Virus record (IMG/VR): IMGVR_UViG_3300009011_000001
Span: 184,575 to 248,574 of that record
Length of the DNA: 64,000 nucleotides
Direction: 5' to 3' (one strand)
Shown here: piece after piece, positions 1 through 62,615 of the stretch
Position numbering within the stretch: position 1 is the stretch's first letter
Layout: every line of letters starts with the position of its first letter
Made by a program: the position numbers and the translations under genes
Notes under the pieces: model-generated
What the model was told of the DNA's origin: nothing
Seen by the model: the letters and a program-made list of their open reading frames with translations, nothing else
Databases searched by the model: none

Positions 1-364
1 ATTTGTCATCTTCGGGGATATCGACCATCGACATCGTCTGTCCTTTAAGGTGGTGGGTGCAGTCACCAAGGAAGATGAGGTTTCCATCCCGGATGAAGAA
101 ATGGCAGGTATAAGGCCGGGGTTCGATCTTCCCTCCTGTCATCAGAATGTCGCGTTCTTCATCGGTGATTCTTGCAGTTCCGTTGATTAACAGACTAGGC
201 GAAAACGTAGGTTCTTTGACGCACATGTTCCAGCCCCAAGAGGCCTGCTTGTTATCCGGATGTTCCAGATACACGTTGTGCATCAGTTTGCAGCCAGGGC
301 AATAGAACGACAATGTGTAGCTGTTTATTTGAAGCAAGATAGGCGACAGTTCTTTTATACTCAT
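1..364 (-). CDS. Cys/His metal-binding protein, DUF6527-like (truncated at window edge; not in ORF track)
   Basis: Manual translation from ATG 364: MSIKELSPILLQINSYTLSFYCPGCKLMH...PTFSPSLL...CHFFIRDG..IFLGDCTH. The CPGCxxxH / PTFSPS / CHxFIxDG / DCxH pattern fits this family as recalled. Confidence 0.7.
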   Translation of the reverse strand, partial: MSIKELSPILLQINSYTLSFYCPGCKLMHNVYLEHPDNKQASWGWNMCVKEPTFSPSLLINGTARITDEERDILMTGGKIEPRPYTCHFFIRDGNLIFLGDCTHHLKGQTMSMVDIPEDDK

Positions 365-393: not shown

Positions 394-822
394 ATGGATA
401 ACAAGGCTGAAGCAAAAAGGCTGATTGAACTTGCACTAAAAGACCCACGGCTTGGACGACCAGCTCTGACGGCAGATATCAACCAACTGGAATGGATCTA
501 CCTCGAAGGCAAACCAGTCGGCTTCTTCACCCCTAAGCTTGAACCAGATGGACGATACAGAACCGGCACCATCTTTATTGAACCATCTCACCGTGGTAAA
601 GGATTAGCTACAGATGTAGTAAAGAAGTATTTTGACGACGGTGATAAACCGGGCCGTGCTTGGATTGAACCCAGTAATCTGGCTAGCCAAACTATCTTCA
701 AACGAGCAGGCTTTTATAAGTCTGGTCGCGTCACTAACTCGAAAGCAACATCACGAATGTTTGAAGAATGGGTGAACAAACCTATCCCTCCTCTTGTGAG
801 TCGACCAGTGTTAGGTTGGTGA
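394..822 (+). CDS. GNAT-family acetyltransferase
   Basis: Motif A IFIEPSHRGKGLA and later SNLASQTIFKRAGF; SD GAGGAG before ATG 394. Confidence 0.85.
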   Translation: MDNKAEAKRLIELALKDPRLGRPALTADINQLEWIYLEGKPVGFFTPKLEPDGRYRTGTIFIEPSHRGKGLATDVVKKYFDDGDKPGRAWIEPSNLASQTIFKRAGFYKSGRVTNSKATSRMFEEWVNKPIPPLVSRPVLGW

Positions 823-844
823 TAAGTTACATTATATGTGTAGA

Positions 845-1070
845 CAGATCACGCCCATCCATCCTGCTCCTGGATGGGCTACTTGTGGTCAGGACATTCC
901 CCCTGACCGATGGTCATTGCCATTCCTGGTCGTGTGGCAGTGACTGCTAAGTATCACTTAGCCTACAGGGCAATCGTCGTGGGAGTGGATTGCTCTGTAG
1001 GGTGTGTGGTGTGTGGCGATGGTGGTGAGCGGAAAGCATAGGGCGGAGCGCAAGCTCCGCCTTTATGCCG
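845..1070 (+). ncRNA. Candidate structured ncRNA 1 (five hairpins, kissing loop, GU tail, terminator)
   Basis: Stems 853-861/871-879, 887-893/902-908, 912-922/935-945, 946-952/956-962, 963-975/988-1000; G-U wobbles favour the + strand; no credible ORF. Confidence 0.65.
1036..1070 (+). terminator. Hairpin-TATGC terminator-like element
   Basis: gcatagggcggagc-gcaa-gctccgcctttatgc. Confidence 0.7.
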
Positions 1071-1091
1071 TTATAGTTCGATTTAAAAAAC

Positions 1092-1108
1092 TCTCAGTAA
1101 TACATACT
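1092..1108 (+). promoter_or_regulatory. Putative early (virion RNAP) promoter
   Basis: CAGTAATACAT variant of the CAGTCACACAT motif at 19031 and 62605. Confidence 0.5.
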
Positions 1109-1130: not shown

Positions 1131-1144
1131 GTCCTTTGGAGGAC
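1131..1144 (+). promoter_or_regulatory. SD-sequestering hairpin GTCCT-TTGG-AGGAC
   Basis: One of 7 copies; ATG at 1151. Confidence 0.75.
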
Positions 1145-1150
1145 TTAGTA

Positions 1151-1489
1151 ATGCAAAAAGCAGATCTCTTGCTCGTCGTGGTTTATGTTGGCTTTATTCT
1201 CTATCGCCAGCATCGTCAGTTCAGCACCCTGCTGTCGCAATCGGTGGGCGGTTGGGCAGGACTCAAGTTCGCCGCTTCAATGCTTTCGGCGTTGTTCTAC
1301 ACGAGCATGGCTAACAACTCGCACTACAGGAACGGGTTCTTAGCATCGTTTATCACCACGCCGATTGTGCTCTACTCCATCGGGTTCCATTACACCCTTG
1401 GGGCTAACCTCTTTTTCGCTGCTGAGTCGACGGCGTTTTTCGTAGCCGGCTGGCATCTTGTCCGCAAACACCAGATGAACACTTTCTGA
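1151..1489 (+). CDS. Small multi-pass membrane protein
   Basis: GGAGG SD, start MQKADL, about 4 hydrophobic segments. Confidence 0.75.
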   Translation: MQKADLLLVVVYVGFILYRQHRQFSTLLSQSVGGWAGLKFAASMLSALFYTSMANNSHYRNGFLASFITTPIVLYSIGFHYTLGANLFFAAESTAFFVAGWHLVRKHQMNTF

Positions 1490-4802: not shown

Positions 4803-5327
4803 ATGAAGGTCAATATCACGCTGACGCCACTGGCTAACGTATTGGCGGCTATCAACGCTGCTAACACCGCAACCAGCACCAACATCACCGAGTCGCAAGT
4901 TACTGCGGCTGCTCCAACCACCGCTGCCGGTACCGGCGGTCGTAACACCAGCGTTGTTCTGACCGGTATCGATGGTCAGGGCATCGAAGGTTCCCGTACC
5001 TTCTCGTACACCCGTCAATCTCTGGCTTCTGGTGCCGTGGCCTCCACCGCTCCTGCCAGCGTTCTGGTCGCTGAAGGCGACAATCAGGCTGCTTCGGTAA
5101 CCAAGGTTGCCACCGCTCTGGGCCTGTTGGCTTCGGAATTTGACGCCAGTGCCTACACCGCACCGGTCGACCAAACCACTCCTGGTACCGTGACCATCAC
5201 CGCAAAAACCAGCAGCTTGCTGTACGTCGGCAGCCGCGTTGTTCCTCTGAACTTCGCTGACGAAGACGTAGCCTTCGCTACCGTGGCTCCGGTGACTGAC
5301 GCCGACGGCTTCGACCCTGAAGCCTAA
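4803..5327 (+). CDS. Virion fibre-family structural protein (single-domain type)
   Basis: NT...G...Y-x-R-x-x-L domain, SLLYVG, C-terminal FATVAPVTDADGFDP. Confidence 0.8.
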   Translation: MKVNITLTPLANVLAAINAANTATSTNITESQVTAAAPTTAAGTGGRNTSVVLTGIDGQGIEGSRTFSYTRQSLASGAVASTAPASVLVAEGDNQAASVTKVATALGLLASEFDASAYTAPVDQTTPGTVTITAKTSSLLYVGSRVVPLNFADEDVAFATVAPVTDADGFDPEA

Positions 5328-6123: not shown

Positions 6124-6607
6124 GTATCGCGTCAATCTCGTCGGCCTGAACGTCAGCAAGCTTGGCACGCCAATGCAGCCAGACGAACGCTGGGCCTCAG
6201 CAGCAAAAGCAGCGATCGAGTTAGGTAGCGCGATCATCGATCCTGCTGACTACAGCTACATGACGGTTGAAGAAATCGTTGAGTGTTTGATTGACTTCGA
6301 TTGGCAAAGAAAAGTCGGTATTGCGTATAAAGACAATATCGAAACCGCTCAGAAGTTGTTCGAACTCCTGAAGAAAGTAGATGGTGACGTAGAGCTCACC
6401 GTCCTCTTTACACCGACCGAAGGCATTTCCGAAGCCCACATCGCTGGCGTACTTAACGTCTGCCGTATTGATAGCTTCTCGGTTGAAAAACTGCTGGGTG
6501 AAGAAACAGGTATTCTGTACCTCAGTTTTGATTACGCCTCAGCAGGTGCGGCTGCGCAGTTGTTTGCAGCAGAAGTTGAAGAAGTTCTCAACACAGTCGT
6601 GCAATAA
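6116..6607 (+). CDS. Hypothetical protein
   Basis: Overlaps upstream stop; ends at a bidirectional hairpin. Confidence 0.75.
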   Translation: MREYRVNLVGLNVSKLGTPMQPDERWASAAKAAIELGSAIIDPADYSYMTVEEIVECLIDFDWQRKVGIAYKDNIETAQKLFELLKKVDGDVELTVLFTPTEGISEAHIAGVLNVCRIDSFSVEKLLGEETGILYLSFDYASAGAAAQLFAAEVEEVLNTVVQ

Positions 6608-6608
6608 G

Positions 6609-6647
6609 CAGCATACACCCCGGCCATTGCGGCCGGGGTGTATGCTG
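6609..6647. terminator. Bidirectional hairpin-TATGC element between convergent genes
   Basis: cagcatacaccccggcc-attgc-ggccggggtgtatgctg. Confidence 0.8.
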
Positions 6648-7193
6648 TCATGCTGGATCGAAACCAAGAGCATCGGTAACCGGAGCCACCGTTGCAAATG
6701 GAATTGGGGCATTGATGATGACCTGAGTCCCGTTCACGTAATAGAACGAGGTAGGTTTGATCTTCAATGTAATCTGCCCACCCGGCGCAGCTATGGTACT
6801 GTTGATGACATCTCGTTGCTCAAGAGCCAAACCGAACTTCGTGTTGATCGCCGACAAGGCTGAGAACACATCCGCATAATTCCCCGAAAGAGTCATGTCC
6901 TTCCCTTGGAACGGAACGGCAATATCTACTCGGTTATAGCGGAAGGTATACGTTCCCTTATAGCCCTTGCCGGCAACCGCGGTCATGAGCACAGTAGTGT
7001 TGAACAGCGTATCGCCAGAACTAACGGTGAGACCGCTGAACGTCACTTGGTTGGCCTGAATCGAAGTCCCTTGCTCTTTGTTAACTGCAGCAAGAATACC
7101 GACTGACCCAGCAACCGAGAACGGCGGCAGGTTGCTCAGGCCGTACATGGCCCACACATCCGCAGAACGGATTACAAACTTTGGGTTCGCCAT
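6648..7193 (-). CDS. Virion fibre-family structural protein (single-domain type)
   Basis: GYKGTYTFRYNRVDI; C-terminal FATVAPVTDALGFDPA. Confidence 0.8.
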   Translation of the reverse strand: MANPKFVIRSADVWAMYGLSNLPPFSVAGSVGILAAVNKEQGTSIQANQVTFSGLTVSSGDTLFNTTVLMTAVAGKGYKGTYTFRYNRVDIAVPFQGKDMTLSGNYADVFSALSAINTKFGLALEQRDVINSTIAAPGGQITLKIKPTSFYYVNGTQVIINAPIPFATVAPVTDALGFDPA

Positions 7194-17274: not shown

Positions 17275-17820
17275 TTAAACGAGAGGAGGAGCGGCGTAAG
17301 TCAGGCCGTCCATTTCGACGTCAGGGATCGCGACAGCCAGATCGATGTCTTCGGCTTTCACGGTGATCGTGATGGAGCCAGTGAAGATCAGCGAGTCAGC
17401 TTTGACGACGATTTGAACGTCATGCTCTTCGTTCAGGGTGCCGGTGAACTCAGGCAGGTCGGCGTCGACGAAGTCGTCGGTAGTCAGGTTGACTTTCAGA
17501 CGGCTGTTGAATTCAGGGATCAGGTCGGCGATCTTGGTGGAGTCGCCAATGCTGAAGACCAGGTCGCGATCGCCGCCGGAGGCAATGAATGCCGCACCGA
17601 CGTCGGTGCCCAGGTGTGGACGAACGTAGCGAATAACGCGATCGTTCTTATAGCCCGAACCAGGAGCAGCGGTCAGAGTGAGGCTGGTGTTTTTGCCAGT
17701 TGCTTCAACAACAGGAAGACCCGCCCAGGTGAAAGAAGCCTCGGTGAAGCCTTTGCCAGTCTTGGCATTGACCATATCGAGAATAATCTGCTTGGGCGCT
17801 TTGGTTAAATCGTTGGCCAT
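17275..17820 (-). CDS. Virion fibre-family structural protein (single-domain type; probably abundant)
   Basis: YVRPHL, SLIFTG, C-terminal AIPDVEMDGLTY; strongly biased codons; flanked by hairpins. Confidence 0.8.
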   Translation of the reverse strand: MANDLTKAPKQIILDMVNAKTGKGFTEASFTWAGLPVVEATGKNTSLTLTAAPGSGYKNDRVIRYVRPHLGTDVGAAFIASGGDRDLVFSIGDSTKIADLIPEFNSRLKVNLTTDDFVDADLPEFTGTLNEEHDVQIVVKADSLIFTGSITITVKAEDIDLAVAIPDVEMDGLTYAAPPLV

Positions 17821-19012: not shown

Positions 19013-19020
19013 ATGGATTT

Positions 19021-19041
19021 AACTTTCTTTCAGTCACACAT
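19021..19041 (+). promoter_or_regulatory. Putative early promoter, 21-bp exact repeat of 62595-62615
   Basis: AACTTTCTTTCAGTCACACAT heads a + strand operon of small genes. Confidence 0.65.
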
Positions 19042-19829: not shown

Positions 19830-19843
19830 GTCCTTAGGAGGAC
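19830..19843 (+). promoter_or_regulatory. SD-sequestering hairpin GTCCT-TAGG-AGGAC
   Basis: Before ATG 19850. Confidence 0.75.
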
Positions 19844-19849
19844 TTAGCA

Positions 19850-20236
19850 ATGACTGCATCTTTTCTCGAAACACTGCGTTTTGTTCCTGAGCTTCCTGAC
19901 CTGCTTCCGCCTCAGTACCATCAACACGGTGCAGAGCAAAGCGAGTTCTCGGAAGAGTTCGGCCTGAACTTTACCCGCATGCCAATGAAAGGCATGTACC
20001 TCTTGGTCTCGAAGAAACGTGATCTCGTGATTACGTTCTCGACACTGATGTTTGAGGAGACGGGCCGTAACTCGGTCGCTTTCTATCGGGCGTCTTTTGC
20101 CGACTTTAAGAAAGCGTTTGTGCGTAAGGAGCACACTGACCTGTTCATCCATGTCGAAGACATGGATGCAAGTCTGATGTTCCCTGGCCTTCGCATCGCT
20201 GAGATCATGAAAGAACATCTCAACTTTGCCGTTTAA
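19850..20236 (+). CDS. Hypothetical protein
   Basis: SD and operon context. Confidence 0.8.
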   Translation: MTASFLETLRFVPELPDLLPPQYHQHGAEQSEFSEEFGLNFTRMPMKGMYLLVSKKRDLVITFSTLMFEETGRNSVAFYRASFADFKKAFVRKEHTDLFIHVEDMDASLMFPGLRIAEIMKEHLNFAV

Positions 20237-20244
20237 ACATCCTT

Positions 20245-20258
20245 GTCCTTTGGAGGAC
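20245..20258 (+). promoter_or_regulatory. SD-sequestering hairpin GTCCT-TTGG-AGGAC
   Basis: Before ATG 20261. Confidence 0.75.
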
Positions 20259-20260
20259 TT

Positions 20261-20746
20261 ATGGATCATTTAACTTACAACAAGTCCGAAGAGAAATTCA
20301 TAGAACGTTTTGATTACGTTTCTGGGATTCGCTCTTACGGCAGCATTCCCGAACTCACGGCTATTCGTTTGGCCCGTGAATCAGAAATGCCGGAACAAGC
20401 TCGTTCTGTCTTCGACCCTCGCTTCGAGACGGCCTACATCAACGAGTATGGTGAGCCACGCATCATCGTAGCCGGAAGCAGAGGTCATGTGATCTTTGGC
20501 CGTGATGGTTCTGTGTACGTGTCGATGGAGTATTCTCAAACGTCGGTCTTCTTAAACAGGCCGGCTTTGATCATCGAACTCATAGAGCATGCATTCTACG
20601 GTGGCCATTCTCTGAATGGCATCACGGAAATGCTCGACTCGCAGTTAATGACCCCGAATCAAGCCTTCTCGGATATTCGGTGGTTCGTCAACCGGCATGA
20701 GCAATTGTGCCTGATGCAGAACTGGTCAACAACTGTTGGCAGATAG
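20261..20746 (+). CDS. Hypothetical protein, tandem paralog of 20755
   Basis: AGSRGHVIF...LIEHAFYGG. Confidence 0.8.
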   Translation: MDHLTYNKSEEKFIERFDYVSGIRSYGSIPELTAIRLARESEMPEQARSVFDPRFETAYINEYGEPRIIVAGSRGHVIFGRDGSVYVSMEYSQTSVFLNRPALIIELIEHAFYGGHSLNGITEMLDSQLMTPNQAFSDIRWFVNRHEQLCLMQNWSTTVGR

Positions 20747-21790: not shown

Positions 21791-21812
21791 TCGTTTGTTC
21801 TTTTATTTTACT

Positions 21813-21826
21813 GTCCTTTGGAGGAC
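21813..21826 (+). promoter_or_regulatory. SD-sequestering hairpin GTCCT-TTGG-AGGAC
   Basis: Before ATG 21832. Confidence 0.75.
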
Positions 21827-21831
21827 TTGCA

Positions 21832-27401: not shown

Positions 27402-29684
27402 ATGAGTCTTATCCGCATCAATAAGGAACAGTACAAAACTCGTTCCGGCCTGGACGTATCCGCGATCCAGTCTCACGTCAATGCCGGCGGCGCGTACAGC
27501 GTTGAAGGTAAAGACCTGGTCCTGTCGCTGAAAGACGGCAGCTTCGAAAGCAAAGCGAACCTGGGCACCATCGCTGACCGCCTGAAGGGCGTTCTGAGCC
27601 TGGAATCGGCCAAGCCTGCTGGCGACGCTCCTGACTACGGCGCGGCTAGCCGTCAAGCTGGTCTGGCCATGGCTTCGATGATCATGGCGTTCGGTGCTTC
27701 GCCTGCCGAATACATGCGTCAACAAGTTTCGTTCGAACAGAAGGCCATGCCTGAAGGTTCGACCATCGCCAACGCCACCGGCCTGGAACACGACTCGATC
27801 ACCGAGTTCTACTCCAAGGAATCGTTCGACAACCAAAACCTGGTTGACGCCCTGTTCCTGTCCGTCGGCGTGAACTACAAGATCGCTCGCCAGGGCCCTG
27901 CAATGGACATGATGTATCGTCCGCTGCCGATGACCCCGGACCAAGGCGCTTTCGACATCGAAATCCCTTGCCTGTACGTTCAGAACAACGTCAAGCACAG
28001 CGCTGACGGCACCCCTTCGGATTTCGGTCTGCGCCGCGTTCTCGACGCCGCGATCGACCACGAAATCCTGAACGACAACGCCACTGCCATCATCCCTGGT
28101 TACAACGATACCACCAAGGATAACTTCGTCGACACCGCGATCGTCGCACCGTTTGACAAAGAAGAAGGCCGCCGCGTCGTCAAGACCTCCGCTCTGAAGG
28201 TCAACCGCACCATCCAGCTCTTCGGCCTGGGTAACGTCGACAACGTTCAACGCGTTGGTCAAGCCGACTACTCCGAAGCACTGGACCGCAACATCGGTGT
28301 TGCTACCGTGTTCCTGCGCCTGGGTTCCGACACCCTGGCCGTCGACACCCGCATGGCTCCGTACAGCCGCTTCTACAAAGGTCCAGAACAGGGCGGCCGT
28401 TCGGTCAAACTGTCCTTCCCAGTGACCCTGATGGAGCTGAACAAAGACAGCCTGAACTACCTCGGCGAAGATCTGACCACTGCGGTGTTCCAGACCATCA
28501 AAGACGGCAAGTACAACGTTCGTCTGAAGTTCACCCTGAACGGCGAAGGCGACGTAGAGCGTGGTACCGTCAACGTTTCTCCGACCAACGTCGAAGTAAT
28601 GTCGATCTACGACGAACTGGGCGCTCTGGTTTCGCTGACCGGCACCATCGGCGCTGGCATCGTCAGCGGCCTGCAGGCTCTGGTTGTTTCCGGCTGGTAC
28701 CCTGATGCCCGCCTGACCAACAGCAACCACCGTTACCTGGGTCTGCAACTGAACACCCGTCCGGTGCGTGAGCGTCTGCTCAGCCGTACTCGTGCTCCGT
28801 TCTTCGTTCCTTACCCACTGGGTGAAGAGCGCGACCAGACCATCCTGGACCAACTGACCTACGTTGTCGGCCAATACACCAACAACGAAGCCATCGGTAC
28901 CATGATCGGTTACCACGAGCGCACCATGCGTCTGTCGAACGGCGGCCTGCGTGGCAACCTGACCATGGGTGACTTCGAGCTGAACTCGAAGCCTATCGAA
29001 GGTATCAGCCGCTGGTTGATCAACCCGTACGTCGTCGAGCTGAACGTCGACTTCCGCAACGCGCAATCGACCGAAACCGCGAACAACGTCGAGAACGCCT
29101 GCGAAACTCTGTACAACGTTCTGCGTTCCGCTGCGTTCGACGGTCTGCAAGCTTCCAACTACGAAACCGTGTGCCGGTTCGTGGATGGCGGCGAGATCGC
29201 CAACAAGTGGCGCCTGGCTATCGTTACCAGCCCGAAAATCAAGCGTTTCCTCACCCTGCAAGGCGACAGCCGGACCCTGGGCGCGGATCTGCCATTCCAG
29301 CTGGAAAGCGATATCGACAACCGTATGGTTGGCAAGCTGTACATGGGTCTGGTGCGCGACGGCGACGGTTTCGACCCGATGTCGAACGGCATCATGCTGC
29401 TCACCCCGACGATGGTTACCACCATCACGGCGACCCGCGACAACTCGCCGCGTAAAGAAGCTGTGGTTCAACCGCGCTTCCAACACTACCAGATCCTCCC
29501 GTGGCTGATCAAAGTCAACGTGGCTGGTGTGGACGAACTGCTGGAAGAAACCCTACCTTTTCGTGTCGAAAACAAGCCGGTTACAACTTTCGGTGGTAGC
29601 GCCATCGGCGGCACTGGGACCGGTGGTTCCGGGACTCCGCCAGTAGGTGGTGACGACGACACCGGTGGTGGTACTCAGCCGTAA
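27402..29684 (+). CDS. Major capsid protein (phiKZ gp120-like)
   Basis: 760 aa, extreme codon bias, propeptide with S/G-x-E sites ending SKE/SFDNQNL, ARLTNSNHR, VQPRFQH; gene order. Confidence 0.9.
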   Translation: MSLIRINKEQYKTRSGLDVSAIQSHVNAGGAYSVEGKDLVLSLKDGSFESKANLGTIADRLKGVLSLESAKPAGDAPDYGAASRQAGLAMASMIMAFGASPAEYMRQQVSFEQKAMPEGSTIANATGLEHDSITEFYSKESFDNQNLVDALFLSVGVNYKIARQGPAMDMMYRPLPMTPDQGAFDIEIPCLYVQNNVKHSADGTPSDFGLRRVLDAAIDHEILNDNATAIIPGYNDTTKDNFVDTAIVAPFDKEEGRRVVKTSALKVNRTIQLFGLGNVDNVQRVGQADYSEALDRNIGVATVFLRLGSDTLAVDTRMAPYSRFYKGPEQGGRSVKLSFPVTLMELNKDSLNYLGEDLTTAVFQTIKDGKYNVRLKFTLNGEGDVERGTVNVSPTNVEVMSIYDELGALVSLTGTIGAGIVSGLQALVVSGWYPDARLTNSNHRYLGLQLNTRPVRERLLSRTRAPFFVPYPLGEERDQTILDQLTYVVGQYTNNEAIGTMIGYHERTMRLSNGGLRGNLTMGDFELNSKPIEGISRWLINPYVVELNVDFRNAQSTETANNVENACETLYNVLRSAAFDGLQASNYETVCRFVDGGEIANKWRLAIVTSPKIKRFLTLQGDSRTLGADLPFQLESDIDNRMVGKLYMGLVRDGDGFDPMSNGIMLLTPTMVTTITATRDNSPRKEAVVQPRFQHYQILPWLIKVNVAGVDELLEETLPFRVENKPVTTFGGSAIGGTGTGGSGTPPVGGDDDTGGGTQP

Positions 29685-29750: not shown

Positions 29751-29879
29751 ATTTTCTAGTCTAAGCTTTTTTACTGATACATTATCTAATAGTACAGACT
29801 TTCTCTTTGTAGAGCGGAAAGCATTGTCGGAGGGGTGAAGATATTCCCCAGAGTAAAATTAAACTAGAGAGCATTACCT

Positions 29880-31004: not shown

Positions 31005-32648
31005 ATGGATATTGAGTGGTTCAATGAATTACAGGCTGACAGGCCAAAGTTCAATCAAAACGTCATTGACGGTTTGGCTTACAAGGAATTGCAACATGCT
31101 GAAAAGCGCGTGGACAACATCATCCATTGCGCAGAGCCGAGCTTTCCTGACAAGTTTGAGTTTTGGGAGTCAAAAGTCTGTGGACCACGGGAGACGTTCA
31201 ACGTCATTGCGGGCGGTCTGACAAAGTCCAACCGCATGCCGCCGACTATCGATCTGGCCGTCACCGATGTCAAGTTGGTGAAGTTCCAATTCGGTTTCGA
31301 TGGACGCGCTCTCTATCCGCGATACTTCTACATTCCGTACTCCCGCTTAGGCGGGTTCATGGGGATTGCAGGTAACCAGTTCCTGATCAGTGCCGTGCTG
31401 GCAGATCCATGCTTCAGCGTGGGTGTGGATCACGTCTTCCTCCGCGTGAACCGTGCACCGATGACTTTCAAACTCGTCGACACAACCATGCGGATCGATG
31501 GCGCTCTGACCAGCCGGGACATCCCCTACAGTTGGCTGCACCACAAAGGCGCCACTAACAAGACGTCGGAAAGTGATGTATTGCAGTTGGGGCATGTTGT
31601 TACGACACTACCGCATTATTTGTTCTGCAAATACGGTCTGAAGGAAGCTTTCAAGAAGTTCTGTAAGGTCGACGTCATCATTCAACATGAAGACGATCCG
31701 GTAGATTCGAAAAACTACGTGGTCTTCTCCAGTCAGAAAGTCAACAAGCCTCGCACTCTGAAAATGAAGGCGGAGCTGTACAAGTTGATTGCTTCTCCAT
31801 TGGTGCTACTCGTGCCACGGAAGCAGCACACTGAACTGGTCACGCAGTTTGCAAGCGCTTTCTTTTACATCGTGGACCATTTCCCTCAGGCGTTGGATAT
31901 CGATGACCTGATGGGTGATGAACTCTGGAAGGTGTGGTTGGGGTACGTGTTGTTCGGGGACCAGCTGGGCCGCCACAAGCTTGTAGAGAACGTGGAGAAC
32001 CATTTGGTCAGGGGTATCGACGAGTATGTCGATCATGACTGCCGACAGATGCTGTACGACGAAGAAGATTTGGTCATCAACGATATTTACGAGTTGTTCA
32101 TTTACTTGATCAATAACATCAAGCGAATGATTCAGAACAACGAGAAAGATATCGCGAGCATGTTCGGCAAACGACTGATGGTAGCGCCGTATGTATTGCG
32201 CGACATCACCAGTCAGGTAATGCGCTGTCTGTTCGAGATCACCAATAACCGGAAGAAAGTTCTCAAATACGACGACTATAACAAGATCCTTGGTAAATTC
32301 TTCAGGCACACAGAAGTGTTCAACCTGCGGAAGACCAACGAGAAACGGTTCATGTCCTCGGTTTCAACCCCCGGCGATAACCTCCTCTTCAAGCTGACGA
32401 CCAAAATCGTTAAGCAAGCGCACACGTCTGGTAGCAAGAAAGCTCCATCCGTAAACGTAAACGACCCTTCAAGCTGGTTGCACTACTCGGCTCTTGAAGC
32501 GGGTAACTTTGGTCTGCTGCCGAAACACGGCCCGCTGGCTAGCAACACGCTTAATCCGACTGTACAGTTGGATGAGAACAACACCATCGTAGAGAAGGAA
32601 CATTTGAAAGCCACGAACGCTTATGTAAATTCCGTAATTCATCGTTAA
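31005..32648 (+). CDS. Non-virion RNA polymerase beta-type subunit (phiKZ gp123-like)
   Basis: PKFNQNVIDGLA, YIPY...G..F.ISAVLAD; size and gene order. Confidence 0.8.
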   Translation: MDIEWFNELQADRPKFNQNVIDGLAYKELQHAEKRVDNIIHCAEPSFPDKFEFWESKVCGPRETFNVIAGGLTKSNRMPPTIDLAVTDVKLVKFQFGFDGRALYPRYFYIPYSRLGGFMGIAGNQFLISAVLADPCFSVGVDHVFLRVNRAPMTFKLVDTTMRIDGALTSRDIPYSWLHHKGATNKTSESDVLQLGHVVTTLPHYLFCKYGLKEAFKKFCKVDVIIQHEDDPVDSKNYVVFSSQKVNKPRTLKMKAELYKLIASPLVLLVPRKQHTELVTQFASAFFYIVDHFPQALDIDDLMGDELWKVWLGYVLFGDQLGRHKLVENVENHLVRGIDEYVDHDCRQMLYDEEDLVINDIYELFIYLINNIKRMIQNNEKDIASMFGKRLMVAPYVLRDITSQVMRCLFEITNNRKKVLKYDDYNKILGKFFRHTEVFNLRKTNEKRFMSSVSTPGDNLLFKLTTKIVKQAHTSGSKKAPSVNVNDPSSWLHYSALEAGNFGLLPKHGPLASNTLNPTVQLDENNTIVEKEHLKATNAYVNSVIHR

Positions 32649-46226: not shown

Positions 46227-46277
46227 GCGATACGCACACCGGCTACGGCCGGTGTGTTATGCTGTATTGAACAAAAA

Positions 46278-46292
46278 GATAGTCACACATTG
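46278..46292 (+). promoter_or_regulatory. Putative early promoter
   Basis: AGTCACACATTG core shared with 62606. Confidence 0.5.
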
Positions 46293-56585: not shown

Positions 56586-57854
56586 ATGTACAGCTGTGTA
56601 AAAGCGTACACCCGGTCCAACGTACCCGGCTCCAGATTTAAGGAACGCCTCATCGGTCCAGAAGACGGAACCGTGCGTTCTTTCCTGGAGGGTGCGCAGT
56701 GCCATTTGGTGCTGACTAACAGTGCCACCGAAGATACTTATTTGCTGAACCTTGAAGATGCAGCAGATTTGATCTACCGCACAGACCCGAGTTTCACCGT
56801 AGATCAGTGGCTGACCTCTCTGGGAGACCTCACTCTACCAACGACTACCATCGACCCCACGAAGTTCGGCATTAAGAAGAAGGTTGTCAAATACAACGAC
56901 CTCATCAATGCCGGCTACGATCCCCAATTGGCTCACCCGTGGATCGGTGATGGAAACGAGTTGCCTGAATCCGAGCTGACCGACATCAAGATCTACAAGG
57001 ATCTCGGCGACTACGAAAAGATCTACCGCAACTGTCTCTTCACAGCAAACGGTTTGATCCACATCGCTGACTATTCGACAGCCAGCATTCGTGTCACTGA
57101 CGCCGGTCGCTCCGTGCGCATCGCCAATGCAAACCAACTCGGCATCATCAGCTTCCAGCAGCTGGGTCAGCTGACCTTCATTCCTATCAAACGTGAGATG
57201 ATCAAACCACTCACCGCCGGTGGGAAGTTGAAGGACGGCTTCAGCATCTCATTCGGTCCAGACGTCGATCTATCGAAGAAAGTCACGATGATGTCTCTGG
57301 GTGGCGTGCTCCATCACTCGAACCAGTATTACCGTCTACAGGGCGATAATTCGCTGGTGGTTGAGTGGTGGAATTTCCCACTGATGCGCCGTTACTTCGA
57401 TACCAAGGATCTGATGGACTGGTCGAAGTTTGAAGCACAGTTGGATCGTAACCCTCGCCACTTCGATACGCTGGACATGGCCAAAGCGATGTCTGATGAA
57501 GCTATCTTGGCATTCATGGAGTTCTCGCAGACCTTTGCGATTCTGCTTGATGCCGACAGCATGTACGTCAGCCTGGATGAAGTAGAACAAACTGATCTTC
57601 CTGGTCGTTATTACACCTACGCTCGTCCTGGCTACCCTCTTCTGCTTGACAACGGCTTCCTTGCCGAGTACATCGCCAAGCCAGAAAATGGAACGTGGGT
57701 GCTCTGCATCGACACCGGCTATAACTACAACTACTACGCAGAGCTTAAGAATCCTGTCGCTGACGACTACGCGCCGTCCGTGCCAGTGAGCAGCAAAGAG
57801 TTCCAATACTGCCGAGCTTGGCTGATGGAGCTTGGTAATGAATCGCTAGGGTGA
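56586..57854 (+). CDS. Conserved jumbo-phage virion structural protein
   Basis: 422 aa, CLFTANGLIH, SLGGVLH, SQTF; gene order near the spike. Confidence 0.65.
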   Translation: MYSCVKAYTRSNVPGSRFKERLIGPEDGTVRSFLEGAQCHLVLTNSATEDTYLLNLEDAADLIYRTDPSFTVDQWLTSLGDLTLPTTTIDPTKFGIKKKVVKYNDLINAGYDPQLAHPWIGDGNELPESELTDIKIYKDLGDYEKIYRNCLFTANGLIHIADYSTASIRVTDAGRSVRIANANQLGIISFQQLGQLTFIPIKREMIKPLTAGGKLKDGFSISFGPDVDLSKKVTMMSLGGVLHHSNQYYRLQGDNSLVVEWWNFPLMRRYFDTKDLMDWSKFEAQLDRNPRHFDTLDMAKAMSDEAILAFMEFSQTFAILLDADSMYVSLDEVEQTDLPGRYYTYARPGYPLLLDNGFLAEYIAKPENGTWVLCIDTGYNYNYYAELKNPVADDYAPSVPVSSKEFQYCRAWLMELGNESLG

Positions 57855-57893
57855 CAGCATACAGCCGGAGGCCGTAGCCTCCGGCTGTATGCC
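57855..57893. terminator. Bidirectional hairpin-TATGC element
   Basis: cagcatacagccggaggc-cgta-gcctccggctgtatgcc. Confidence 0.75.
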
Positions 57894-57896
57894 ATT

Positions 57897-58163
57897 TCAG
57901 TTACTGCAGTTGAACCAACCCTGACCATCGGTCTGGTGGCTGCAACTTGCCAGGTTGCCTGCGATGCAAACGGGGATGCCGTTGATCTTGAAGAAGGTCG
58001 AGCCTTGAACCATCTTGGCGCTTTGGTGGCTGCCGCTACCGTGTGGTGCAACATCATCGCCCAGCACAGCCACGAGAGCACCGATAGCCTTGCAGAAGGT
58101 TTGGCCACCACCACGCTGAACACCACCTGCGTTGTTCAGCCCTACTAATGCAACTCCGGGCAT
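57897..58163 (-). CDS. PAAR-like spike tip protein
   Basis: VALVG, VAVLGD..APH...H, INGIPVCIAG..ASCSH metal site; follows the spike gene. Confidence 0.85.
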   Translation of the reverse strand: MPGVALVGLNNAGGVQRGGGQTFCKAIGALVAVLGDDVAPHGSGSHQSAKMVQGSTFFKINGIPVCIAGNLASCSHQTDGQGWFNCSN

Positions 58164-62366: not shown

Positions 62367-62595
62367 TGGAGAATATGAATTCCCCGAGGAGGACTTCTTC
62401 GGGGTAGTCGAAGTTTCGACATTTCGCCATGGGAAGATGTACGTCAAGACTGAAGGTCAAAGTGTTGGCGTAAACATCCCTGATGACGAGCTTTGGGATA
62501 AACGTTTTAAGCGTGGCGATACATTGGAAGTTTACGTCGCACCTGATAACTTTACGCATTACCGGAAGTACGTCCCGCAACAATCCGACGAATAA
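62359..62595 (+). CDS. Small beta-rich hypothetical protein
   Basis: AGGAG SD; OB-like KRGDTLEVYV. Confidence 0.7.
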   Translation: MSNGEYEFPEEDFFGVVEVSTFRHGKMYVKTEGQSVGVNIPDDELWDKRFKRGDTLEVYVAPDNFTHYRKYVPQQSDE

Positions 62596-62615
62596 ACTTT
62601 CTTTCAGTCACACAT
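62595..62615 (+). promoter_or_regulatory. Putative early promoter, 21-bp exact repeat of 19021-19041
   Basis: AACTTTCTTTCAGTCACACAT. Confidence 0.65.

What the first reader, a model, noticed from the sequence alone, without database searches (positions are those of the whole stretch)
845..1070. Candidate novel ncRNA 1: five back-to-back hairpins with a 7-bp loop-loop pseudoknot
Seen: almost every base from 853 to 1000 lies in one of five adjacent hairpins (9, 7, 11, 7 and 13 bp). Non-Watson-Crick pairs are G-U on the + strand, which gives the orientation. Loop 2 CAUUCCC (895-901) is complementary to loop 5 GGGAGUG (981-987). Loops 3 and 5 both contain GUCGUG. An alternative pairing 847-852/885-890 competes with hairpin 2. 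The unit is bounded by a promoter-like GTTACATTATATG (826-838) and a hairpin-TATGC end. Inference: this is an independently transcribed ~225-nt RNA with tertiary structure. I do not recognise it as a tRNA, tmRNA, ribozyme or known riboswitch.
Basis: partly seen in the sequence, partly recalled or inferred. Interest (0 to 1): 0.85.

Follow-up and report, generated by a model that had tools for sequence, protein, structure and literature searches.

The report
Conserved structured RNA in jumbo phage
A gap between two genes of an uncultured phiKZ-like giant phage encodes a real, evolutionarily maintained folded RNA (five hairpins locked by a loop-loop pseudoknot, ending in the phage's standard terminator) that matches no described RNA family and whose job is still unknown.

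Summary
Window 853-1000 folds into five adjacent hairpins, with z = -6.98 against shuffles. The same RNA sits directly after the same GNAT gene in six diverged lineages of uncultured phiKZ-like jumbo phages. Across them 98.7% of pair cells stay paired, and 19 pairs show changes on both sides (1-5 in slid controls). The 56 G-U pair cells exist only on the + strand. The loop 2 / loop 5 kiss is kept in all lineages, with one compensatory A-U to G-C change.

The unit (826-1070) is more conserved than the neighbouring coding sequence, for example 98.0% against 81.8% nucleotide identity. Its substitutions show no codon periodicity.

The "hairpin-TATGC end" is the canonical phiKZ-type intrinsic terminator (hairpin + YTTATKYYGT). 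This motif recurs across the window. An invariant TACATTATATG lies upstream and includes the phiKZ late-promoter core TATG. A second promoter-like motif follows the terminator.

No Rfam family, tRNA or tmRNA matches. I found no copy in cultured phages, E. coli or GTDB genomes.

Best reading: a stand-alone non-coding RNA of about 230 nt that acts through its fold. Independent transcription and function are inferred, not shown. Rivals are a leader or attenuator, and a 3'-UTR element of the GNAT mRNA.

The parts
394..822 (+). GNAT acetyltransferase gene (142 aa), the constant upstream neighbour of the RNA
   Evidence: Pfam Acetyltransf_1, E 4.6e-07. It lies directly upstream of the RNA in every homologous contig.
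826..838 (+). Conserved promoter-like motif GTTACATTATATG. Contains TATG, with G838 as the candidate +1.
   Evidence: TACATTATATG is invariant in 6 of 7 variants, with a 1-nt deletion in the L061 type. The phiKZ late promoter is TATG with G as +1 (PMC4666361). TATGTGT also precedes the genes at 17820(-) and 18974(-). No transcript data.
839..852 (+). Variable, unpaired 5' leader
   Evidence: Sequence and length differ between lineages.
853..879 (+). Hairpin 1 (9 bp; loop with conserved UGCUC)
   Evidence: 100% of cells paired; 5 of 9 pairs changed on both sides.
886..909 (+). Hairpin 2 (8 bp). Its loop ACAUUCCC supplies the 5' strand of the pseudoknot (895-901).
   Evidence: 96.4% of cells paired; 1 compensatory pair and 4 one-sided G-U changes.
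912..945 (+). Hairpin 3 (12 bp with three invariant G-U pairs; loop with invariant UGGUCG). The most conserved part.
   Evidence: 9 of 12 pairs never vary and 2 are compensatory; G-U at columns 64-98, 69-93 and 75-87 in all 7 sequences.
946..962 (+). Hairpin 4 (7 bp, triloop), flush against hairpins 3 and 5
   Evidence: 98% of cells paired; 2 compensatory pairs.
963..1000 (+). Hairpin 5 (13 bp). The 3' part of its loop, GGGAGUG (981-987), is the 3' strand of the pseudoknot.
   Evidence: 98.9% of cells paired; 8 of 13 pairs changed on both sides. The 5' part of the loop varies, while the 7 kissing bases are conserved or compensated.
895..987 (+). Loop 2 / loop 5 kissing pseudoknot: 895-901 pairs with 981-987 (7 bp)
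   Evidence: 100% paired in 7 sequences. A896-U986 becomes G-C and U897-G985 becomes U-A in the L005/L006 lineage. This is one independent event only.
1001..1035 (+). G/U-rich, C-poor spacer of variable length
   Evidence: Its length and sequence differ between lineages, and it stays G/U-rich and C-poor in all of them.
1036..1071 (+). phiKZ-type intrinsic terminator: GCAUAG-GGCGGAGC-GCAA-GCUCCGCC-UUUAUGCCGU
   Evidence: The tail matches the phiKZ consensus YTTATKYYGT (PMC10914365). The stem has 2-3 compensatory pairs. 8 of 9 YTATGYYGT sites in the window follow a strong GC hairpin.
1077..1105 (+). Promoter-like motif for the downstream operon (TTCGATTTAA...AGTAATACAT)
   Evidence: AGTNAYACAT matches exactly at 1096, 19032, 46281 and 62606. 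Each is preceded by a T-rich run and followed by SD+ATG. It is conserved in L010, L011, L005 and L006.
1133..1489 (+). Stereotyped RBS hairpin (UGUCCUUUGGAGGACUU) and a 112-aa membrane-protein gene. This neighbour varies between lineages.
   Evidence: The RBS motif recurs at 19830, 20244 and 21811. L005/L006 and L013 have other genes directly after the RNA.

Best explanation
The 328-nt gap after the GNAT gene encodes a discrete + strand non-coding RNA of roughly 230 nt (about 838 to about 1070). Its core (853-1000) is five adjacent hairpins tied together by a 7-bp kiss between loops 2 and 5. A variable G/U-rich spacer and the phage's standard intrinsic terminator follow. My reading is that the phage's own RNA polymerase makes it as its own small transcription unit, with a TATG-type start at G838. 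I also read it as acting in trans through its folded shape, as a binding partner or decoy for a protein or small ligand. Hairpin 3 and its loop would be the recognition surface, and hairpins 1 and 5 the scaffold.

Shown: the conserved structure, the strand, purifying selection, the absence of a conserved ORF, and a terminator-type 3' end.

Inferred: the promoter and 5' end, action in trans, and what the RNA binds.
For: Structure and selection:
- Fold z = -6.98.
- Homologs exist in six diverged lineages.
- 98.7% of pair cells are paired. 19 pairs change on both sides, against 1-5 when partners are slid. 0 of 500 shuffles reach the observed values (full gap).
- G-U pairs occur only on the + strand.
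- The pseudoknot is 100% paired, with one compensatory change.
- The unit is more conserved than the adjacent CDS in 5 of 6 comparisons, for example 98.0% against 81.8% and 92.1% against 72.7%.
- Substitutions show no codon periodicity and no ORF is conserved.

Transcription signals:
- The terminator tail UUUAUGCCGU fits the experimentally mapped phiKZ terminator motif (PMC10914365). That motif recurs in the window.
- The phage is phiKZ-like: it has an nvRNAP beta/beta' homolog.
- The conserved upstream motif contains TATG, the phiKZ late-promoter core (PMC4666361).
- A second promoter-like motif follows the terminator.

Context:
- The downstream gene differs between lineages, while the RNA and its terminator stay the same.
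- Stems 1 and 5 vary freely, whereas hairpin 3 and loops 2, 3 and 5 are nearly invariant.
- No conserved single-stranded seed and no conserved alternative or antiterminator pairing were found.
- phiKZ and 201phi2-1 do make short intergenic RNAs bounded by a start site and a terminator (PMC10914365, PMC11512511).
Against: - There are no RNA data, so 5' end, abundance and timing are unknown.
- The upstream 11-mer occurs essentially once in 64 kb and is not a demonstrated promoter class of this phage.
- It also fits an RNase E-like AU-rich site. It can also pair with 1004-1011 as a weak A-U/G-U closing helix (94.6% paired, no covariation).
- No terminator lies between the GNAT gene and the RNA, so it is also a 3' UTR.
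- The pseudoknot rests on one independent compensatory event, and a 7-bp loop match has a 7.7% chance background.
- The family is small. It has 7 sequence variants, one phage clade and no cultured member, so no partner can be named.
Confidence: 0.5

Rival explanations
1. Cis-acting leader. Transcription starts at about 838, and the folded domain controls how often the polymerase stops at the 1036-1071 terminator instead of reading into the downstream operon. This would be a riboswitch or protein-dependent attenuator, and the short RNA would be a by-product of premature termination.
For: The order promoter-like motif, structured domain, terminator, genes is the layout of a transcriptional attenuator. 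In phiKZ, 17 short RNAs arise from 5'UTRs. For terminators inside 5'UTRs across the six phages of that study, 81% gave either read-through or a short aborted transcript (PMC10914365).
Against: No conserved antiterminator or mutually exclusive pairing was found. The spacer between the fold and the terminator varies greatly in length and sequence between lineages. The gene after the terminator differs in 3 of 6 lineages. A separate promoter-like motif, shared with other genes, follows the terminator. No Rfam riboswitch matches, even at E up to 10.
Confidence: 0.2
2. A 3'-UTR element of the GNAT mRNA. It is transcribed from the GNAT promoter. Either it stays attached, as a stabiliser or regulator of GNAT expression, or it is cut out at the conserved AU-rich ACAUUAUAUG to give a 3'UTR-derived RNA.
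For: The RNA follows the GNAT gene in every lineage and no terminator lies between them. A TATG lies 20 nt upstream of the GNAT start. AC/AUU within the invariant 11-mer resembles the RNase E preference RN/WUU. That preference is recalled from my own knowledge and was not checked here.
Against: L012 pairs a 72%-identical GNAT with a 92%-identical RNA unit, and the break falls at the GNAT stop. So the RNA moves as its own module. The distant GNAT homolog in Burkholderia phage FLC9 has no such gap after it. Five hairpins plus a pseudoknot with conserved loops is far more than 3'-end protection needs.
Confidence: 0.2
3. A DNA-level signal, such as a replication or packaging site, or recombination hairpins, rather than an RNA.
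For: Both strands fold far better than shuffles.
Against: 56 pair cells are G-U on the + strand and would be A-C mismatches on the other strand. Evolution runs through G-C, G-U and A-U intermediates. The element ends in a strand-specific terminator motif.
Confidence: 0.03
4. The region encodes small proteins (ORF 768-950, 836-943 or 910-1041).
For: Open frames of 35-60 codons exist. A 74-aa gene was auto-called in this region in L011.
Against: Indels of 1-2 nt shift the frames between lineages, and L013 has stops. Substitutions are spread evenly over the three codon positions (12/14/11 and 19/18/14). Variable positions are compensated pairwise. There is no SD sequence of the stereotyped type this phage uses.
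Confidence: 0.02

Closest known systems
Short intergenic or 5'UTR-derived RNAs of phiKZ and 201phi2-1 (e.g. the phiKZ 141-nt transcript upstream of PHIKZ302; eleven 201phi2-1 sRNAs)
   Same: They occur in the same type of phage, with its own multisubunit RNA polymerases. They are under 250 nt and bounded by a phage start site and the conserved hairpin + TTAT-type terminator. Their function is unknown (PMC10914365, PMC11512511).
   Different: There is no sequence similarity: no match to cultured phages. This RNA has a much more elaborate, covariation-supported fold with a pseudoknot. Its transcript has not been observed.
GOLLD / ROOL (large ornate phage-associated RNAs)
   Same: They are orphan, highly structured RNAs carried by phages. 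Their architecture depends on kissing loops (bioRxiv 10.1101/2024.12.08.627333).
   Different: Those are 400-800 nt, lie near tRNA genes and assemble into multimers. Here the core is about 150 nt and no Rfam match was found. Whether the kiss is intra- or intermolecular is untested.
phi29 pRNA
   Same: It is a phage-encoded RNA of about 120-170 nt whose two complementary loops pair, between molecules, to build a functional assembly. This is from my own knowledge.
   Different: There is no Rfam pRNA match. This is a different phage type with a terminase-driven jumbo capsid. There is no link to packaging genes, and it is a five-hairpin chain rather than a three-way junction.
Lysine riboswitch (five-helix junction with an L2-L3 kissing interaction)
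   Same: It has a multi-helix domain stabilised by a loop-loop kiss and sits upstream of an intrinsic terminator. This is from my own knowledge.
   Different: There is no Rfam match. No covariation-supported closing P1 was found and no antiterminator. The downstream gene is not conserved.

Membership tests
Any Rfam 15 family (riboswitches, ribozymes, sRNAs, 6S, Y RNA, pRNA, GOLLD/ROOL, etc.) | Covariance-model score at or above the family's gathering threshold | tested here: not met
   There were 0 matches in the whole window and 0 in homologous loci. At E up to 10 on 700-1250, the only hits were three noise matches on the minus strand over the terminator.
tRNA / tmRNA | Cloverleaf or tmRNA architecture detectable by ARAGORN | tested here: not met
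   0 genes in the 64 kb window.
phiKZ-type intrinsic terminator (for 1036-1071 only) | GC-rich stem-loop immediately followed by YTTATKYYGT | tested here: met
   GGCGGAGC-GCAA-GCUCCGCC + TTTATGCCGT fits the published consensus (PMC10914365). 8 of 9 YTATGYYGT sites in the window follow a hairpin of -16 to -28 kcal/mol. The stem covaries in homologs.
phiKZ-type intrinsic terminator (for 1036-1071 only) | Mapped 3' ends of transcripts at the site | not testable with these tools
   No transcriptome is available for this uncultured phage.
Transcriptional riboswitch / attenuator | Structured sensor directly upstream of an intrinsic terminator in a 5' leader | tested here: met
   The layout is 838-1000 fold, spacer, terminator.
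Transcriptional riboswitch / attenuator | Conserved alternative (antiterminator) pairing that competes with the terminator or with the sensor | tested here: not met
   The candidates 847-852/885-890, 837-850/1110-1123 and 1006-1014/1119-1127 are not conserved. The spacer length varies widely between lineages.
Transcriptional riboswitch / attenuator | Consistent association with the regulated downstream gene(s) | tested here: not met
   Three different genes follow the RNA in six lineages. A promoter-like motif lies after the terminator.
Base-pairing (Hfq-type) sRNA | Conserved single-stranded seed and a terminator with a U-run | tested here: not met
   The unpaired 5' leader and the 3' spacer are the least conserved parts. 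The tail is UUUAUGCCGU, not poly-U.
Csr/Rsm-type protein sponge | Several hairpin loops presenting GGA | tested here: not met
   Only loop 5 carries GGGA, and it is used by the pseudoknot. Loops 1-3 are C/U-rich.
Phage short intergenic ncRNA transcription unit (phiKZ / 201phi2-1 type) | Start site and terminator less than 250 nt apart, in an intergenic region of a phiKZ-like phage | tested here: inconclusive
   The phage type is met. The terminator is met. The start site is inferred only from the conserved TATG-containing motif.

The most novel reading that the evidence does not exclude
The loop 2 / loop 5 complementarity acts between molecules, so the RNA assembles into dimers or closed rings, as phi29 pRNA and ROOL/GOLLD do. 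Alternatively, the RNA is the dedicated partner of the invariably adjacent GNAT acetyltransferase, as an RNA inhibitor, guide or substrate mimic. One lead for the second idea is that the invariant UGGU of loop 3 could pair with a tRNA 3' ACCA end. Either would be a new RNA-based mechanism in nucleus-forming jumbo phages. Nothing here excludes these readings, and nothing here specifically supports them beyond the geometry and the gene linkage.
Probability: 0.1. Interest if true: 0.85.

Novelty: new member of a known kind. Interest (0 to 1): 0.55.

Why it matters
Jumbo phages of the phiKZ type transcribe their genomes with their own polymerases. They are now known to make many short RNAs of unknown role.

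This element is a clean case of such an RNA. It has a complex fold that selection demonstrably maintains, including a tertiary contact. It is more conserved than the protein gene beside it. It carries the phage's own start-like and stop signals.

It gives a defined family to look for in transcriptomes and to probe biochemically: an alignment, a covariance model and clear boundaries. It also extends the phiKZ terminator motif to a distant, uncultured branch.

Its limits are a narrow distribution, no cultured host and no functional clue.

Tried and rejected
Searches that found nothing:
- Rfam at gathering and at permissive thresholds gave nothing meaningful.
- ARAGORN found nothing.
- blastn of the region found nothing in cultured phages or in E. 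coli genomes.
- Pattern scans of IMG/VR found only the three known contigs plus one chance hit, L014.
- The GTDB genome scan gave one chance hit, L136, in a high-GC actinobacterial MAG.
- A helicase-alignment search for more distant relatives found no new contigs.
- Protein searches with the 120-aa and 112-aa downstream genes added only L061-type copies or nothing.

Hypotheses tested and dropped:
- Loop 3 pairing with CGACCAG in the GNAT 3' end is not conserved.
- Loop 1 pairing with GAGCGG in the spacer was checked by eye and is not kept in L011, L012, L061 or L013.
- The long-range pairings around the whole gap are specific to the window.

Other steps that led nowhere:
- The sigma-70 promoter scan found nothing, as expected for a phage with its own polymerases.
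- The GNAT has only generic acetyltransferase matches. Its AlphaFold model was too poor to use (pLDDT 59), so I ran no fold search.
- A window-wide z-score scan with 12 shuffles per window was too noisy to rank regions. An earlier version timed out.

Full report
**Where the window comes from**

The window is the last 64 kb of IMGVR_UViG_3300009011_000001, a 248,574-bp contig. It encodes a phiKZ-type major head protein (27402-29684). It also encodes a homolog of the non-virion RNA polymerase beta/beta' subunit of phiKZ, PhiPA3 and Goslar (31005-32648). Similarity to cultured phages is distant, at 25-40% amino-acid identity. So this is an uncultured phiKZ-like jumbo phage that should transcribe its genes with its own polymerases.

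**The observation**

The finding lies in a 328-nt gap. Upstream is a GNAT acetyltransferase gene (394-822). Downstream is a 112-aa membrane-protein gene (1151-1489) with a stereotyped ribosome-binding hairpin that recurs before three other genes.

- All five hairpins and the loop 2 / loop 5 complementarity are present at the stated coordinates.
- The region 845-1070 folds at -115.1 kcal/mol, z = -6.98.
- The opposite strand also folds well (z = -6.26), so a single-sequence fold does not fix the strand.
- A 7-bp match between any two of the five loops appears in 7.7% of loop shuffles.

**Homologs**

- The region has no match in cultured phages.
- A search with the neighbouring SNF2 helicase found two related IMG/VR contigs, L005 and L006. 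They carry the region at about 75% identity.
- A search of 5.8 billion proteins with the GNAT gave four clusters. Their contigs (L010, L011, L012, L013) all carry the element directly after the GNAT stop.
- A loop-based DNA pattern scan of metagenomes added L061 and re-found the known contigs. The other hits in the truncated list were chance matches.
- Three further L061-type copies came from a downstream protein.
- In all there are seven sequence variants in six lineages, 66-98% identical in the core. They come from many samples.
- There is one copy per genome region searched.
- No copy was found in 185,579 species genomes or in E. coli.

**Structure is under selection**

On the 7-sequence core alignment (A4), measured for the five hairpins plus the pseudoknot:

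- 98.7% of 390 pair cells are standard pairs.
- 19 of 56 pairs show changes on both sides, against 1-5 when partners are slid by 1-3 columns.
- None of 500 column shuffles reaches the observed pairing, double-change counts or covariation score. The full-gap alignment agrees.
- RNAalifold recovers the same five hairpins and the terminal hairpin on its own.
- Stem columns vary as often as unpaired ones (51 of 98 against 22 of 46), yet pairing is kept.
- Read on the minus strand, only 329 of 390 cells pair, because 56 cells are G-U on the + strand. This fixes the strand and argues for RNA.
- Hairpins 1 and 5 covary freely (5 of 9 and 8 of 13 pairs).
- Hairpin 3 is nearly invariant, with three fixed G-U pairs and a UGGUCG loop.

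**The pseudoknot**

- The pseudoknot is paired in every sequence.
- In the L005/L006 lineage, A896-U986 has become G-C and U897-G985 has become U-A.
- The rival loop 1 / loop 5 match seen in the window (6 bp) is lost in that lineage.
- Within loop 5, the five 5' bases vary while the seven kissing bases do not.
- This is good support, but it rests on one independent event.

**Not coding, and more conserved than coding**

- Indels of 1-2 nt break all frames between lineages, and L013 has stops.
- Substitutions fall evenly on the three codon positions.
- The unit 826-1070 is more conserved than the adjacent GNAT coding sequence in five of six comparisons:

| Lineage | RNA unit, nt identity to window | GNAT gene, nt identity to window |
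|---|---|---|
| L010 | 98.0% | 81.8% |
| L012 | 92.1% | 72.7% |
| L011 | 86.9% | 81.6% |
| L061 | 84.9% | 79.5% |
| L005 | 77.4% | 67.7% |
| L013 | 69.4% | 71.5% |

- By eye on alignment A2, L010 differs from the window at about 12 of 80 positions in the 80 nt after the terminator, against about 2% in the unit. The conserved block therefore has edges at about 826 and about 1070.
- In L012 a divergent GNAT abuts a near-identical RNA unit, with the switch at the GNAT stop. This suggests the unit is exchanged as a module.

**The 3' end**

- The terminal hairpin is GGCGGAGC-GCAA-GCUCCGCC followed by UUUAUGCCGU.
- It fits the motif of 61 experimentally mapped phiKZ terminators, a stem-loop followed by YTTATKYYGT (PMC10914365). 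A similar motif is reported in 201phi2-1 (PMC11512511).
- In the window, 8 of 9 YTATGYYGT sites directly follow a GC-rich hairpin. They lie at 1063, 3812, 29734, 35368, 35344(-), 45203, 45318 and 46257, mostly just after gene ends. Further variants precede the genes at 4803, 5437 and 17820(-).
- The stem covaries in homologs.

**The 5' end**

- TACATTATATG, directly after the GNAT stop, is invariant except for a 1-nt deletion in the L061 type.
- It contains TATG, the necessary core of phiKZ late promoters, with the G as +1 (PMC4666361).
- TATGTGT also precedes two other genes.
- An A-rich run followed by TTAC resembles the phiKZ middle motif AAanTTACc, which lies about 24 nt upstream of start sites (PMC4666361, PMC8244752).
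- However, the 11-mer is essentially unique in the window and rare in related loci.
- It could instead be a processing site.
- It could also be the 5' strand of a weak closing helix with 1004-1011. That helix is 94.6% paired, uses only A-U and G-U pairs, shows no covariation and is partly broken in L013.
- Independent initiation is therefore inferred, not shown.

**Context**

- After the terminator comes a T-rich run plus AGTAATACAT. The pattern AGTNAYACAT matches exactly at 1096, 19032, 46281 and 62606. At these sites it is preceded by a T-rich or A-rich run and followed by an SD and ATG. About one match would be expected by chance, by my arithmetic from the pattern's information content. At 46257/46281 it also follows a terminator. 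The downstream operon therefore seems to have its own promoter.
- The gene after the RNA differs between lineages. It is the membrane protein in the window, an extra gene of about 125 aa in L005/L006, and an inserted 224-aa gene cassette in L013.
- The GNAT upstream is constant in this clade.
- The distant GNAT homolog in Burkholderia phage FLC9 has no gap after it.

**Alternatives tested**

- The long-range pairings 837-850/1110-1123 and 1006-1014/1119-1127 are specific to the window.
- No antiterminator was found.
- The spacer between the fold and the terminator varies greatly in length and sequence between lineages, while staying G/U-rich and C-poor.
- Together with the variable downstream gene, these points weaken a riboswitch or attenuator reading without excluding it.
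- The 3'-UTR reading stays open because nothing stops GNAT transcripts before 1062.

**What it is and how novel**

It is a new family of phage-encoded structured RNA. It matches nothing in Rfam 15. A large IMG/VR screen for structured RNAs exists (PMC10690425). I could not check whether a fragment of this RNA is among its 8,495 unnamed IMG/VR candidates.

I commit to a stand-alone RNA that acts through its fold. Confidence is about 0.9 that it is a real, selected + strand structured RNA. Confidence is about 0.5 that it is an independent, trans-acting unit. Its target is unknown.

The family is narrow and has no cultured member, which lowers how directly it can be tested. A possible culturable analog is the unannotated 513-nt gap of Pseudomonas phage pPa_SNUABM_DT01. 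That gap folds with z = -6.93 and ends in the same terminator type. The covariance model does not match it significantly (9.7 bits, E 0.11).

Noticed in passing
window 1133-1150, 19830-19850, 20244-20261, 21811-21828: A stereotyped translation-start hairpin, UGUCCUU(U/A)GGAGGACUU, places the Shine-Dalgarno sequence in a 4-bp stem-loop 5-8 nt before the ATG of at least four genes.
   Followed up: partly
window 1063, 3812, 29734, 35344(-), 35368, 45203, 45318, 46257; also about 4780, about 5412, about 17840(-): This phage uses the phiKZ-type terminator: a GC hairpin, often flanked by CAUAG...CUAUG, followed by YTATGYYGT. The tail contains TATG, the phiKZ late-promoter core, so these sites could serve as both terminator and restart point.
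   Followed up: partly
window 1077-1105, 19015-19041, 46268-46290, 62590-62615 (related: 29755-29788): A promoter-like motif, a T-rich or A-rich run followed by AGTNAYACAT, lies 46-107 nt upstream of SD+ATG, twice directly after a terminator. It may be the early-promoter class of this phage lineage.
   Followed up: partly
L140:2709-3221 (-) = MW735835.1 262300-262812: The cultured Pseudomonas phage pPa_SNUABM_DT01 has an unannotated 513-nt gap near its SNF2 helicase. It folds into a chain of hairpins (z = -6.93) and ends in hairpin + GGTTATGC. It has no Rfam match and no homolog in other cultured phages. Its match to model R1 is not significant.
   Followed up: partly
L006:10001-13355: The SNF2 helicase match spans 3355 nt in this relative, against 2553 nt in the window's contig. 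That implies an insertion of about 800 nt in the gene, possibly an intron, intein or homing endonuclease.
   Followed up: no
L013:4728-5518: A 224-aa gene is inserted between the RNA's terminator and the downstream operon. It is followed by a second copy of the terminator-plus-leader segment (5420-5518 matches window about 1053-1147). This looks like a moron-type cassette insertion.
   Followed up: partly
window 1-363 (-): The gene divergent from the GNAT is a homolog of a PF20137 (BubE) protein, as annotated for its counterparts in L010, L012 and L013. Only about 30 nt separate the two start codons.
   Followed up: no
L012:1822-2494 vs window 394-1066: This contig looks mosaic. Its GNAT is 72% identical to the window's, but its RNA unit is 92% identical, with the switch at the GNAT stop codon.
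   Followed up: partly
window 28851-29000 (-), 57851-58000 (-), 6501-6750 (both strands): These windows scored very low z in a coarse, noisy folding scan with 12 shuffles per window. The first lies inside the major head gene. They were not verified with proper shuffling.
   Followed up: no
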